Positions 7,583 through 64,000 of a DNA stretch of 64,000 nucleotides are shown here, in pieces (the stretch's first letter is position 1; each line of letters starts with the position of its first letter). A model generated the notes under the pieces. It did no database searches. It saw only the letters and a list, made by a program, of their open reading frames with translations, and was not told the origin of the DNA. A program made the translations under genes and the position numbers. This DNA is from Haliotis rufescens. Its lineage: Eukaryota. The DNA lies in NCBI RefSeq assembly GCF_023055435.1, contig NW_025963846.1, forward strand, positions 26,536,001-26,600,000, written 5' to 3'.

Positions 7583-7666
7583 GATAAATGTCATCACGAA
7601 CGTCCTGTCACGCCGGGTGACATACTCTACGTCGTGCGGGTGGTGGGGTCGATGCACCAGACACAG
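7583..7666 (+). CDS. Copy A exon 2, EMI-like tip (INVITNVLSRRVTYSTSCGWWGRCTRH)
   Basis: ttacag|...|gtaata, phase 2-2; paralog at 51914. Confidence 0.85.
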
Positions 7667-10600
7667 GTAATAGCCAGCTGTCATACAAGTATTGATCAGA
7701 TGTAATACATGTATTCACTGCTTAACATATATTTTCATATATGTATTGCCTAACTGCCATGCAGGTAGTCAGCAGTTGTTATATAGGTATCGATCAACTG
7801 CCCTACAGATAATCACTAACTAACAGGTAATGGCGAACTGCCATACATGTAAATCAATAACTGTCAAACAGATATTCACTAACTGTCATACAGGCAAACA
7901 CTAATTGTCATACAGGCAAACACTAATTGTCATACATGTAAATCAATAAATGTCATACAGATATCCACTAAATGACATACAGGCAAACACTAATTGTCAT
8001 ACAGGCAAACACTAATTGTCATACAGGCAAACACTAACTGTCATACAGGCAAACACTAATTGCCATACAGGCAAACACTAACTGTCATACAGGCAAACAC
8101 TAATTGTCATACAGGTAATCACTAACTAACAGGTAATGGCGAACTGCCATACATGTAAATCAATAACTGTCATACAGATAGCCACTGACTGTCATACAGG
8201 TAATCACTAACTGTCATACAGGTATCCACTGACTCTCATACAAATCATCACTTGTCATACAGGTAATCATCAGGTAATCACAATCTACCATACAAGTAAT
8301 CACTTATTTTCATTCAGGGAAACACTAACTGTCATACAGGTAATCACTAACTGTCATACAGGCAAACACTAACTATTATACAGGCAAACACTACTTGTCA
8401 TACAGGTAATCACTAACTAACAGGTAATGGTGAACTGCCATACATGTAAATCAATAACTGTCAAACATATATTTACCAACTGTCATACAGGCAAAAACCC
8501 TTAATGTCATACAGATAGCCACTAACTGTCATACAGGTAATCACTAACTGTCATACAGGTAATGACCAATGGTCATACAGATAATCCCCAACCGTTATAC
8601 AGATAAATCACTAACTGCAATACAGATATTCACTGACGCTCATACAAATCATCACTTGTCATACAGGTAATCATCAGGTTATCACAATCTACCATACAGG
8701 CCAACACTAACTGTCATACAGGCAAACACTAACTATCAATCAGGTAATCACAATCTACCATACAGGCCAACACTAGCTGCCTTACAGGTAATCACAATCT
8801 ACCATACAGGCCAACACTAACTGTCATTCAAGTAATCACAATCTACAATACAGGCCAACACTAACTGCCTTACAGGTTATCACAATCTACCATACAGGCC
8901 AACACTAACTGTCATACAGGTAAACACTAACTATCATACAGGTAATCCCAATCTACCATACAGGCCAACACTAACTATCATACAGGTAATCCCAATCTAC
9001 CATACAGGCCAACACTAACTGTCATTCAGGTAATCAAAATCTACCATACAGGCCAACACTAACTGCCTTACAGGTAATCACAATCTACCATACAGGCCAA
9101 CACTAACTGCCTTACAGGTAATCACAATCTACCATACAGGCCAACACTAACTGCCTTACAGGTAATCACAATCTACCATACAGGCCAACACTAACTGGCA
9201 TACAGGTAAACACTAACTATCATACAGGTAATCACAATCTACCATGCAGGCCAACACTAACTGCCTGACAGGTAATCACAATCTACCATACAGGCCAACC
9301 TTAGCTGCCTTACAGGTTATCACAATCTACTTTACAGGCCAACACTAACTATCATACAGGTAATCACATCTACCATACAGGCAAACACTAACTGCCTTAC
9401 AGGTAATCACAAACTACCATACAGCCAAACACTAACTGCCTTACAGGTAATCACAATCTACCATACAGCCAAACACTAACTATCATACAGGTAATCACAA
9501 TCTACCATACAGCCAAACACTAACTATCATACAAGTAGTCACATCTACCATACAGCCAAACACTACCTATCATACAGGTAATCACAATCTACCATACAGC
9601 CAAACATTAACTATCATACAGGTAATCACAATCTACCATACAGCCAAACACTAACTATCATAAAGGTAATCACAATCTACCATACAGCCAAACACTAACT
9701 ATCATACAGGTAATCACAATCTACCATACAGCCAAACACTAACTATCATACAGGTAGTCACATCTACCATACAGCCAAACACTAAATATCATATAGGTAA
9801 TCACAATCTACCATACAGCCAAACACTAACTATCATACAGGTAATCACAATCTACTATACAGCCAAACACTAACTATCATACAGGTAGTCACAATCTACC
9901 ATACAGGCCAACACTTACTGCCTTACAGGTAATCACAATCTACCATACAGCCAAACACTAAGTATCATACAGGTAATCACAATCTACCATACAGCCAAAC
10001 ACTAACTGTCATACAGGTAAACACTAACTATCATACAGGTAATCCCAATCTACCATACAGGCCAACACTAACTATCATACAGGTAATCCCAATCTACCAT
10101 ACAGGCCAACACTAACTGTCATTCAGGTAATCAAAATCTACCATACAGGCCAACACTAACTGCCTTACAGGTAATCACAATCTACCATACAGGCCAACAC
10201 TAACTGCCTTACAGGTAATCACAATCTACCATACAGGCCAACACTAACTGCCTTACAGGTAATCACAATCTACCATACAGGCCAACACTAACTGGCATAC
10301 AGGTAAACACTAACTATCATACAGGTAATCACAATCTACCATGCAGGCCAACACTAACTGCCTGACAGGTAATCACAATCTACCATACAGGCCAACCTTA
10401 GCTGCCTTACAGGTTATCACAATCTACTTTACAGGCCAACACTAACTATCATACAGGTAATCACATCTACCATACAGGCAAACACTAACTGCCTTACAGG
10501 TAATCACAAACTACCATACAGCCAAACACTAACTGCCTTACAGGTAATCACAATCTACCATACAGCCAAACACTAACTATCATACAGGTAATCACAATCT

Positions 10601-62695: not shown

Positions 62696-63404
62696 AGTGT
62701 TCAAAAATGCGTAAAACAAATATTGCCTCAAATTTTATTTATGCTGTCTTTACAGACGGCAGCTCACTCTCTTGTCACGCTCAGTTGCGTATGCGAGTAA
62801 ATCGACTCACGGCAGCTAGTGAGCCCCAGCGGCCAGTGTCAGACAGCCGAGGAAAGTTTTGCTCACATTGGGTCATTCCTGGTGATTGCAAATATAACGT
62901 TTTTCGTTCGCCAAATGTATGCTTTAGATAGTACAATTATGATTAAGCAGTCACCACCACTCATTTCTTATTATTTTACGAAGGAATATGCCCGATTTCC
63001 CCACACTCCACTTTCTATTTTGTGTTTTGTAAGAATAAGAGAAGGTGTTGTTTATCACTAATTATAAGAGGATATTGGAAATGAATATGAACAGCCATGT
63101 TGCCTGACTTTTGATCGATTTGAGATCCTCACAATCACCGTGACAGAATCTCGTTAGGTTTTGTGATTTTTACATTTGCCCGATGACCATAGTCAGTGTT
63201 GCTGGGGATACCAAAGTTAAGAGTTTATGATTAGAGGAAATTGGTTGCAATTAACTAGAATGCTTCATATTGACAAAATATATAAAAGCTAGATATGTGC
63301 CCATACCAAATATACACTGGTATTTGCTTAATAGTGCCAGTGTGGTTGATCAACAGAAGTATAACGCTTATTCACACTTGGTGTGGCAGAAATTGAACAT
63401 TATG

Positions 63405-64000
63405 GTCAGTGTAGGTTGTACATACATGTGATCTATCTCTCTGTGTACAGATAGTGTAGGTTGTACATACATGGGATATATCTCTCTGTGTACGGGTAGT
63501 GTAGGGTGTACATACATGGGATCTATCTCTCTGTGTACAGATAGTATAGGTTGTACATACATGGGATCTATCTCTCTGTGTACAGGTAGTGTAGGTTGTG
63601 TATACATGTGATCTATCTCTCTGTGTACAGGTAGTGTAGGTTGTACATGTATGGGATCTATCTCTCTGTGAACAGGTAGTGTAGGTTGTGTACACATGGG
63701 ATCTACCTCTCTGTGTACAGATAGTGTAGGTTGTACATACATGGGATCTATCTCTCTGTGTACAGATAGTGTAGGCTGTACATACATGGGATCTATATCT
63801 CTGTGTACATATAGTGTAGGTTGTACGTACATGTGATCTACCTCTCTGTGTACAGGTAGTGTAGGTTGTACGTACAGGACATCTATCTCTCTGTGTAGAG
63901 GTAGTGTAGGTTGTGTATACATGTGATCTACATCTGTGTGTACATATAGTGTAGGTTGTGTATACACGGGATCTACATCTGTGTGTACATATAGTGTAGG
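63405..64000. repeat. 45-bp minisatellite resumes to the window end
   Basis: Same unit as 54385-57968. Confidence 0.97.

What the first reader, a model, noticed from the sequence alone, without database searches (positions are those of the whole stretch)
7583..64000. Tandem family of unnamed large secreted EMI-EGF-TNFR-FN3 proteins with hallmarks of a diversifying recognition system
Seen: a 19-exon, phase-consistent gene largely invisible to the ORF track, plus a second copy in the same orientation, duplicated signal-peptide exons, a strongly diverged N-terminal exon and a truncated copy. Knowledge: tandem birth-and-death arrays with variable distal tips on repeat stalks typify invertebrate immune, allorecognition and gamete-recognition genes. 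I do not recognise this architecture as a named gene. Inference: an undescribed receptor or effector family with a variable tip on an FN3-like stalk.
Basis: partly seen in the sequence, partly recalled or inferred. Interest (0 to 1): 0.85.

Follow-up and report, generated by a model that had tools for sequence, protein, structure and literature searches.

The report
Tandem uncharacterised secreted FN3-repeat gene family
The window holds one broken and one just-starting copy of a tandemly duplicated abalone gene family. It encodes large secreted proteins with a cysteine-rich head on a rod of fibronectin-III-like domains. The family is old, widespread in marine invertebrates and unstudied, and there is no proof yet of an immune or recognition role.

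Summary
On the + strand I rebuilt 18 GT-AG, phase-consistent, stop-free exons (7583-27662, about 1076 codons). They are collinear with full-length homologues. Exon 20 is broken by an 8-nt deletion private to this copy and a 3-kb insertion, and the last exons are missing.

A second copy starts in the window. It has two duplicated signal-peptide exons (32087-32160, 38869-38948) and exon 2 (51914-52003). The rest lies beyond 64000.

The genome is probably Haliotis rufescens. It carries 8 close copies on this contig and about 9-10 older ones elsewhere.

All homologues are annotated only as "uncharacterized". They occur in molluscs, annelids, a nemertean, echinoderms, hemichordates and amphioxus, with one weak sponge match.

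Structure prediction shows a tandem FN3-like rod. Pfam supports FN3 weakly. It gives only weak sub-threshold EGF matches and no EMI or TNFR match.

dN/dS is below 1 in every exon: core 0.17, N-terminal half 0.45-0.49. Only an 18-codon tryptophan-rich loop in exon 2 is hypervariable, and its synonymous sites are just as diverged.

Verdict: a real, undescribed, secreted extracellular family evolving by birth and death. The "diversifying recognition system" reading is possible but unproven. No RNA evidence could be obtained.

The parts
7583..7666 (+). Gene 1 exon 2. First half of the small cysteine-rich (EMI-like) head, with an 18-codon hypervariable Trp-rich loop.
   Evidence: Acceptor ttgttacag, donor GTAATA, phase 2. 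About 77% nt identity to paralogues. Patch identity 0.54-0.60 against 0.82-0.90 in the adjoining intron.
13114..13184 (+). Gene 1 exon 3, second half of the EMI-like head.
   Evidence: Junction scoring. Weak match to the Lineus homologue at residues 51-64. 93-94% identity to paralogues.
13333..13506 (+). Gene 1 exon 4, cysteine-rich module.
   Evidence: tblastx and tblastn conservation. Splice sites. 13 copies in the genome.
13851..13991 (+). Gene 1 exon 5, cysteine-rich module.
16764..16877 (+). Gene 1 exon 6, EGF-like module.
   Evidence: Weak Pfam EGF_laminin match, E=0.11, below cut-off.
17801..18058 (+). Gene 1 exon 7, start of the all-beta 'tip' domain, no Pfam match.
   Evidence: Only 35-46% identity to distant paralogues.
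18471..18606 (+). Gene 1 exon 8.
   Evidence: Weak tblastx conservation. Splice sites.
18772..18982 (+). Gene 1 exon 9.
19520..19678 (+). Gene 1 exon 10, start of the first FN3-like domain (W-x-G-W-x-D-D motif).
   Evidence: Best exon chain. Matches the C583 paralogue.
20118..20347 (+). Gene 1 exon 11.
20866..20990 (+). Gene 1 exon 12.
   Evidence: Contiguous with exon 11 in the C583 paralogue.
21713..22019 (+). Gene 1 exon 13, conserved FN3-like core.
   Evidence: dN/dS 0.12.
22345..22471 (+). Gene 1 exon 14, conserved core.
   Evidence: dN/dS 0.09.
22594..22830 (+). Gene 1 exon 15, core with a conserved cysteine-rich insertion (C-Y-C-T-P-x-G-C-Y-H-R-H-F-Q).
   Evidence: 19 genomic matches. 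dN/dS 0.14.
25761..25970 (+). Gene 1 exon 16. Its acceptor is the last unit of a 33-bp minisatellite.
26063..26337 (+). Gene 1 exon 17.
27006..27153 (+). Gene 1 exon 18, diverged, with a 6-nt indel against paralogues.
27441..27662 (+). Gene 1 exon 19, a complete FN3-like unit with a CAG|GTAAGT donor.
28049..28127 (+). Gene 1 exon 20, 5' piece. An 8-nt deletion private to this copy shifts the frame and gives a stop after 11 codons.
   Evidence: Alignment with four paralogues. Translations.
28128..31132 (.). Insertion of about 3 kb that splits exon 20. It carries internal inverted copies at 28731-28976 and 29216-29467.
   Evidence: Collinearity with paralogue P5 jumps from 28130 to 31134. Near-identical ORFs, sharing their last 54 residues, lie on opposite strands.
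31133..31188 (+). Gene 1 exon 20, 3' piece. Homology to paralogues ends at 31370, and the exons that follow exon 20 in paralogues are absent.
32087..32160 (+). Signal-peptide exon E1a, upstream duplicate.
   Evidence: ATG, hydrophobic core, GTAAGA donor in phase 2. Lies in duplicated block 31869-32842.
38869..38948 (+). Signal-peptide exon E1b of copy 2.
   Evidence: ATG, hydrophobic core, GTAAGT donor in phase 2. Block 38680-39713 is conserved upstream of exon 2 in paralogues P6-P8.
51914..52003 (+). Copy 2 exon 2. Its loop sequence differs from gene 1 and is nearly the same as paralogue P6.
7836..11074 (.). 22/44-bp intronic minisatellite starting about 170 nt after the exon 2 donor. Each unit contains CAG|GTAAT. 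The same array occurs in copy 2 at 52070-52834.
   Evidence: TRF.
12588..13107 (.). 45-bp intronic minisatellite ending 6 nt before exon 3. The same family occurs at 54407-57968 and 63408-64000 in copy 2.
   Evidence: TRF. Also present in paralogue P5.
25104..25766 (.). 33-bp minisatellite whose units end in an acceptor-like CTAG. The last unit supplies the exon 16 acceptor.
   Evidence: TRF. The array is also present, and longer, in P5.

Best explanation
The window covers two neighbouring members of a tandemly expanded gene family in an abalone genome, probably Haliotis rufescens. Each intact member encodes a large secreted modular glycoprotein of about 1450-1500 residues.

The parts, in order, are:
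- a signal peptide;
- a small cysteine-rich, EMI-like head with a tryptophan-rich variable loop;
- two cysteine-rich modules and one EGF-like module;
- an all-beta domain of about 190 residues with no assigned fold;
- a rod of nine or more atypical FN3-like domains, each opening with a W-x-G-F-x-D-x-x-S-G motif.

Shown: the exon structure, the copy number, the FN3 rod, the signal peptides, the lack of a membrane anchor in most homologues, and the pattern of constraint.

Inferred: the protein acts outside the cell as a multivalent binding or scaffold molecule, in the manner of tenascin or EMILIN. The cysteine-rich head and tip would bind a partner or oligomerise, and the FN3 rod would act as a spacer.

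The family turns over by unequal crossing-over and decay. Gene 1 is such a decaying copy. Exons 2-19 are intact and were under purifying selection until recently. Exon 20 is frameshifted and split by a 3-kb insertion, and the last exons are gone. Copy 2 has a duplicated first exon.
For: Gene model.

Breakage of gene 1.

Family size: 8 close copies on contig C68, 2 on C223, 1 on C457, 1 on C135, and 5-6 on C583.

Species: contig C583 is 59,995,430 bases long. That equals the contig length recorded for H. rufescens LOC124141846. The C223 paralogue is mostly 60-89% identical, exon by exon, to an H. rubra protein.

Homologues: 660 representatives at E<=0.001. All named ones are 'uncharacterized' or 'hypothetical', or carry only automatic domain labels such as 'EGF-like domain-containing protein'.

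FN3 rod: the AlphaFold model of a 527-aa homologue covering exons 13-19 has pLDDT 77. Its best Foldseek matches are LAR, PTP-delta, fibronectin and contactin FN3 arrays, with E down to 1e-8. The 979-aa model has pLDDT 83 and gives FN3 matches of Z 9-10 at rmsd 2-3 A over residues 280-975. Pfam fn3 hits appear on long homologues.

Secretion: signal peptides are seen. Most full-length homologues have no TM-like segment.

Constraint: core exons 13-16 have omega 0.17 (0.10-0.28). Tip exons 7-12 have 0.49 (0.33-0.71). Cysteine-rich exons 3-6 have 0.45 (0.28-0.78). Changes private to the gene 1 lineage give omega 0.28.
Against: No transcript or protein evidence was obtained.

The extracellular scaffold or binder role rests on architecture alone.

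Pfam gives no EMI match, so the analogy with EMILIN-type heads rests on a cysteine pattern.

A few homologues show a strong hydrophobic segment near the C-terminus (P0163, P0180, P0041), so membrane-anchored forms may exist.

The search centred on the H. rubra protein listed no protein from the C68 cluster. This could mean these copies are not annotated as coding.
Confidence: 0.6

Rival explanations
1. This is a diversifying recognition family for immune, allorecognition or gamete recognition. The variable N-terminal head and tip would bind non-self or partner ligands. Copy-number turnover and the hypervariable exon 2 loop would supply a repertoire.
For: Tandem array with broken members. The N-terminal half evolves about three times faster at replacement sites than the core. 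The 18-codon Trp-rich loop in exon 2 is far more diverged than its own flanking intron, at 0.54-0.60 against 0.82-0.90 identity, and varies in length. Near-identical loop variants are shared by copies 3 Mb apart (copy 2 and P6).
Against: dN/dS is below 1 in every exon and pooled region. In the hypervariable patch dS (0.63) is as high as dN (0.52). That fits old alleles escaping gene conversion as well as it fits selection. The family is ancient and multi-copy across many phyla, with a strongly conserved core. No immune-type domain was found, and there are no expression data.
Confidence: 0.2
2. The C68 cluster is mostly a graveyard. These would be recent segmental duplicates of an older functional gene that are decaying, so the variable features are relaxed constraint and not function.
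For: Gene 1 has a frameshift, a TE insertion and lost 3' exons. P8 has in-frame stops in exons 11 and 16 and a 9-nt deletion in exon 13. Copy 2 shows a frameshift-like split in exon 19. Introns are swollen with satellites and transposons. No C68-cluster protein appeared among the annotated homologues.
Against: Changes private to each copy give omega 0.19-0.57, including 0.28 for gene 1. Core exons keep omega 0.17. P5, P6 and P7 have all 18 exons open, and P5 has downstream exons as well.
Confidence: 0.15

Closest known systems
Tenascins (vertebrate and chordate extracellular matrix glycoproteins)
   Same: Secreted. N-terminal cysteine-containing head, then EGF-like modules, then a long array of FN3 domains forming a rod. 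Multi-copy.
   Different: No heptad assembly domain was recognised and no C-terminal fibrinogen globe was found (no Pfam hit). The FN3-like domains are atypical and barely reach the Pfam fn3 model. An extra all-beta domain of about 190 residues sits between the EGF-like part and the rod.
EMI-domain proteins (EMILINs, multimerins, MEGF10/PEAR1/Draper)
   Same: The N-terminal position of a small cysteine-rich module with a C-G-W...R-C...Y-R pattern. In the Lineus homologue there is also a C-C-x-G-Y-G-G-x-x-C motif. A weak protein-language-model lead points to an EMI+EGF_PEAR1L cluster (score 0.76).
   Different: Pfam EMI did not match any exon or homologue even at E<=5. The abalone copies lack the paired cysteines. 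There is no gC1q domain, no coiled coil and no EGF-laminin run.
Tandemly arrayed invertebrate recognition families (FREPs of Biomphalaria, sea-urchin Trf/185-333, amphioxus VCBPs). Comparison from general knowledge.
   Same: Tandem clusters with gene birth and death. A variable distal part on a conserved body. Secreted.
   Different: There are no lectin, fibrinogen or Ig V-type domains. No dN/dS above 1 was found. No evidence of immune expression. The family is conserved from a weak sponge match to amphioxus and is not lineage-restricted.
Bacterial and phage Ig-like/FN3-like repeats (Pfam Big_13, Ig_J_second, Ig_Rha78A_N)
   Same: The repeat's W...D-x-x-S-G-I...Y signature gives sub-threshold to moderate hits to these models in long homologues. 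Structural matches include phage tail-tip and bacterial glycosidase FN3-like modules.
   Different: The resemblance is at the level of single domains only. The animal proteins have a eukaryotic signal peptide, EGF-like modules and spliced genes.

Membership tests
FN3 (fibronectin type III) repeat proteins | Beta-sandwich domains of about 90-100 residues in tandem, recognised by the fn3 profile or by fold. | tested here: met
   Pfam fn3 hits on long homologues: P0001 3.3e-40, P0050 5.9e-11, P0041 2.5e-8. No hit on single window exons. Predicted structures match solved FN3 arrays: Foldseek E 1e-8 to 1e-6, and VIA Z 9-10.4 at rmsd 2-3 A over 88-106 residues.
EMI domain (Pfam PF07546) | Match to the EMI profile. 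| tested here: not met
   No EMI hit on exon 2 of either copy. No EMI hit on the Lineus, Pomacea or amphioxus full-length homologues at E<=5.
EMI domain (Pfam PF07546) | Cysteine pattern with the paired C-C-x-G-[WY] motif near the end. | tested here: inconclusive
   The pattern is present in the Lineus homologue, while the window has a single cysteine there (V-C-N-S-G-Y). The atlas lead to an EMI cluster scores only 0.76.
TNFR cysteine-rich domain | Match to TNFR-type cysteine-rich repeat profiles. | tested here: not met
   No Pfam hit on exons 4-5 or on full-length homologues.
EGF-like domain | Six-cysteine EGF profile match. | tested here: inconclusive
   Exon 6 gives EGF_laminin E=0.11 and EGF_Tenascin E=0.18, both below cut-off. 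JAG1-like_EGF2 gives E about 1 on homologues. UniProt labels some homologues 'EGF-like domain-containing'. Atlas neighbours are EGF clusters at 0.76.
Tenascin | C-terminal fibrinogen-related globe and N-terminal heptad assembly region. | tested here: not met
   No fibrinogen_C or related hit in any homologue scanned.
Diversifying recognition gene family | Excess of replacement over silent change (dN/dS above 1) in the variable part. | tested here: not met
   Per-exon values are 0.09-0.92. Pooled N-terminal regions give 0.45-0.49 with upper bounds below 0.8. The exon 2 patch gives dN 0.52 and dS 0.63. Only five copies were compared and no site models were run.
Diversifying recognition gene family | Expression in immune, contact or reproductive tissue, or induction by challenge. 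| not testable with these tools
Cell-surface receptor | Transmembrane segment and cytoplasmic tail. | tested here: inconclusive
   Most homologues with a complete N-terminus have only the signal peptide. Five of the 26 scanned show an internal hydrophobic segment scoring 1.8 or more: P0180, P0163, P0044, P0052 and P0041. The C-termini of the intact C68 copies were only partly recovered.

The most novel reading that the evidence does not exclude
The tryptophan-rich loop between two cysteines in exon 2 differs in sequence and length in almost every copy, while the intron next to it is 82-90% identical. It could be a selected specificity determinant at the tip of a head-on-rod secreted protein. 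That would make this an undescribed molluscan, and perhaps pan-invertebrate, recognition family whose repertoire is stored as tandem paralogues and reshuffled by gene conversion.
Probability: 0.17. Interest if true: 0.75.

Novelty: new variant of a known kind. Interest (0 to 1): 0.45.

Why it matters
If the proteins are made, this is a conserved, multi-copy family of very large secreted proteins. It is found in molluscs, annelids, a nemertean, echinoderms, hemichordates and amphioxus, and nobody has studied it. Its head and tip have no matching Pfam family, and no fold could be assigned to them here. Abalone offers a compact tandem cluster with intact and freshly broken copies. That makes it a natural system for asking how such families turn over and whether the exon 2 loop is a specificity element. 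For genome annotation, the case shows that short exons buried among satellites and transposons can hide an ~1100-codon (~1076) reading frame from ORF-based views.

Tried and rejected
1. Pfam on 20 single exon frames found nothing above threshold.
2. A profile of ten homologues against all PDB sequences found no match at E<=1.
I did not try another route.
5. A search for short protein fragments identical to exon 13, as possible transcript-derived ORFs, found none. This says little.
6. Paper searches by accession of ten homologues gave zero hits. A keyword search gave nothing relevant.
7. I first suspected the shared segments at 4656-5071, 32712-32843 and 39623-39986 might hold the first exon. 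They have no start codon with a signal peptide and look like a dispersed repeat. The real first exons were then found at 32087 and 38869.
8. The fold of the tip domain (exons 7-9) could not be assigned.
9. Own-genome searches with exons 4, 7, 15 and 19 hit only this family, apart from six weak exon 19 repeat matches on C57 and C223 that were not followed up.
10. Joined step left out. Exons were searched one by one by reference, and natural full-length homologues returned by the tools stood in for the spliced product. Exon chains were scored only inside scripts to choose splice sites.
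Full report
**What is there**

The window is eukaryotic DNA, contig C68:26,536,001-26,600,000 of a 1.33-Gb assembly. Stop-free frames on the + strand between 13 and 28 kb looked coding. Pfam recognised none of them one by one.

Own-genome searches with two of these frames returned many matches exon by exon. There are eight close copies on the same contig. Five lie on the + strand at 26.55, 26.61, 26.68, 26.79 and 26.94 Mb. Three more lie at 29.85 (-), 29.96 (-) and 30.00 (+) Mb. 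Older copies sit on C583 (five to six in 14.53-14.81 Mb), C223 (two), C135 and C457.

**Gene model of copy 1**

tblastx against four distant paralogues gives sharply bounded conserved blocks. tblastn with full-length homologues found by the representative search is collinear over the same blocks.

I chose splice sites by GT-AG, phase and fit of the junction to homologues. This gives exons E2-E19 as listed under parts. They total 3229 nt, about 1076 codons. There are no internal stops, all phases are compatible, and the donors are mostly GTAAGT-like.

With the broken exon 20 it has 19 exons in the window. I did not send a joined protein to any tool. Exons went in singly by reference, and natural homologues served for the whole-protein analyses.

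**Copy 1 is broken at its 3' end**

Paralogues carry further FN3-like exons after E19. In the window, collinearity with paralogue P5 runs to 28130, resumes at 31134-31370, and then stops.

Exon 20 begins at 28049 behind a good acceptor. It carries an 8-nt deletion that P5-P8 lack, which brings a stop after 11 codons. It is split by an insertion of about 3 kb (28128-31132). The exons after it are absent.

Changes private to copy 1 still give omega 0.28 (14 silent, 14 replacement). The damage is therefore recent, or the shortened product is still used.

**Copy 2**

Exon 2 of a second copy lies at 51914-52003. Two first exons encoding classic signal peptides lie upstream at 32087-32160 and 38869-38948. 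Both end in phase 2 on a GTAAG donor, which fits exon 2. They sit in duplicated blocks (31869-32842 and 38680-39713) that are conserved upstream of exon 2 in paralogues P6-P8.

The remaining exons of copy 2 lie beyond the window, with exon 4 at window-equivalent 65568. Its exon 19 looks frameshifted. No first exon for copy 1 was found within 1-7583.

**What the protein is**

The representative search with E19 found 660 proteins at E<=0.001. Many are 2000-6000 residues long and contain up to 25 copies of this repeat. Thirty-three of them share the whole collinear architecture from the cysteine-rich part to E19.

Every source name is 'uncharacterized', 'hypothetical', or an automatic 'FN3/EGF-like domain-containing' label. 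The species include:
- molluscs: Haliotis rubra, asinina and rufescens, Lottia, Pomacea, Nucella, Mytilus, Pinctada, Mya, Saccostrea;
- annelids: Owenia, Ridgeia;
- a nemertean: Lineus;
- echinoderms: Acanthaster, Asterias, Amphiura, Anneissia;
- a hemichordate: Ptychodera;
- amphioxus: Branchiostoma;
- a sponge, Oscarella, as one weak match (22% identity).

Paper searches by accession found nothing.

The H. rufescens entry sits on a contig of 59,995,430 bases. That is exactly the length of C583 here, so the genome is probably red abalone.

**Folds**

An AlphaFold model of a 527-residue homologue covering E13-E19 has pLDDT 77 and is all-beta. Foldseek ranks solved tandem FN3 arrays first.

A 979-residue annelid homologue reaching back to the E7-E9 region has pLDDT 83. 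It shows FN3-like domains from about residue 280 to the end, with Z 9-10.4.

Its first 190 or so residues correspond to the tip, E7-E9. They are predicted with confidence as all-beta with three strands of 17-20 residues. Their fold could not be assigned because the FN3 rod filled the hit list.

Pfam fn3 is reached only on long homologues. EMI and TNFR profiles never match. EGF profiles give only weak sub-threshold matches. The EMI-like label rests on a cysteine pattern and a weak language-model lead. Most homologues have a signal peptide and no membrane segment.

**Selection**

I compared copy 1 with four close paralogues exon by exon using the Nei-Gojobori method. No exon exceeds dN/dS 1.

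Pooled values with bootstrap intervals:

| Region | Exons | dN/dS | Interval |
|---|---|---|---|
| Cysteine-rich modules | 3-6 | 0.45 | 0.28-0.78 |
| Tip | 7-12 | 0.49 | 0.33-0.71 |
| Core | 13-16 | 0.17 | 0.10-0.28 |
| Late exons (few changes) | 17 and 19 | 0.80 | 0.37-2.1 |

Constraint is therefore not uniform, and there is no region-level positive selection.

Exon 2 is the exception in amount of change. An 18-codon stretch between two cysteines differs in sequence and length in nearly every copy. Mean pairwise identity there is 0.54-0.60, against 0.82-0.90 in the last 90 nt of the preceding intron.

Its silent divergence is as high as its replacement divergence (dS 0.63, dN 0.52). The pattern can be read two ways: as old variants that escape the gene conversion homogenising the rest, or as selection blurred by multiple hits. 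Copy 2 and P6, 3 Mb apart, share almost the same loop.

**Context**

Three intronic minisatellites lie close to splice sites, and two of them abut the site:
- a 22/44-bp array begins about 170 nt after the E2 donor;
- a 45-bp array ends 6 nt before E3;
- a 33-bp array supplies the E16 acceptor.

All three recur in paralogues. Intron 1 of copy 2 holds a Tc1/mariner remnant, a reverse-transcriptase remnant and 7 kb of a 20-bp satellite.

**Reading**

The evidence best fits a secreted, modular, extracellular binder or scaffold family of ancient origin that is expanding and decaying locally in abalone. The recognition-system idea remains open at about one chance in five to six. It needs expression data, site models on all copies, and population data.

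Noticed in passing
window 7836-11074, 12588-13107, 25104-25766 (also 52070-52834, 54407-57968, 63408-64000): Three different intronic minisatellites lie at or close to splice sites, and each unit carries a splice-site-like motif (CAG|GTAAT, or CTAG at the acceptor). The arrays are conserved in position in paralogue P5 but differ greatly in length between copies. The 45-bp array is 0.5 kb in gene 1 and 3.6 kb in copy 2.
   Followed up: partly
window 4170-4654, 41395-43861, 46357-50744: A 20-bp satellite (unit TGTTGCCGACATGTCCCTAC) is open in all three frames, so it creates long spurious ORFs. It lies upstream of exon 2 in both copies.
   Followed up: partly
window 40284-41252 (-) and 43931-45064 (-): A Tc1/mariner transposase remnant (DDE_3, HTH_Tnp_Tc3_2) and a reverse-transcriptase zinc-binding remnant (zf-RVT) lie inside intron 1 of copy 2.
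   Followed up: yes
window 28128-31132: The insertion that splits exon 20 has inverted copies of about 250 bp (28731-28976 and 29216-29467) and a direct repeat (29736-29923 and 30155-30343). Its 209-aa ORF has no Pfam match.
   Followed up: partly
L001/L007 (C583:14.80-14.82 Mb) and L004 (C457:3.08 Mb): Intron positions differ between old paralogues. Exons 11 and 12 are contiguous in the C583 copy. Exons 7 and 8 lie in one 201-codon open frame in the C457 copy.
   Followed up: partly
L026-L030 (C68:29.985-30.035 Mb, paralogue P8) and C68:26637388-26637677 (copy 2 exon 19): P8 has in-frame stops in exons 11 and 16 and a 9-nt deletion in exon 13. Exon 19 of copy 2 matches in two overlapping pieces with a TGA. 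So there are further decaying members.
   Followed up: partly
protein P0025 (H. rubra XP_046575805), orthologue of the C223 locus: The public model replaces the EMI-like and cysteine-rich start with a thrombospondin-like start and a PLAT domain (Pfam PLAT, 1.3e-11). This is either a fused gene model or a real chimeric paralogue.
   Followed up: no
window 23014-24144 (+), inside the intron between exons 15 and 16: Two consecutive ORFs of 212 and 158 codons have no Pfam match. They are probably a transposon remnant.
   Followed up: partly
The three ORFs I scanned gave only weak coiled-coil hits. It lies where the first exon of gene 1 would be expected by comparison with copy 2.
   Followed up: partly
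G000 C57:4.77-4.95 Mb and C223:1.47-1.62 Mb: Single open frames of 411-430 codons contain repeats 31-36% identical to exon 19. This is another family built from the same atypical FN3-like unit but with large exons.
   Followed up: no
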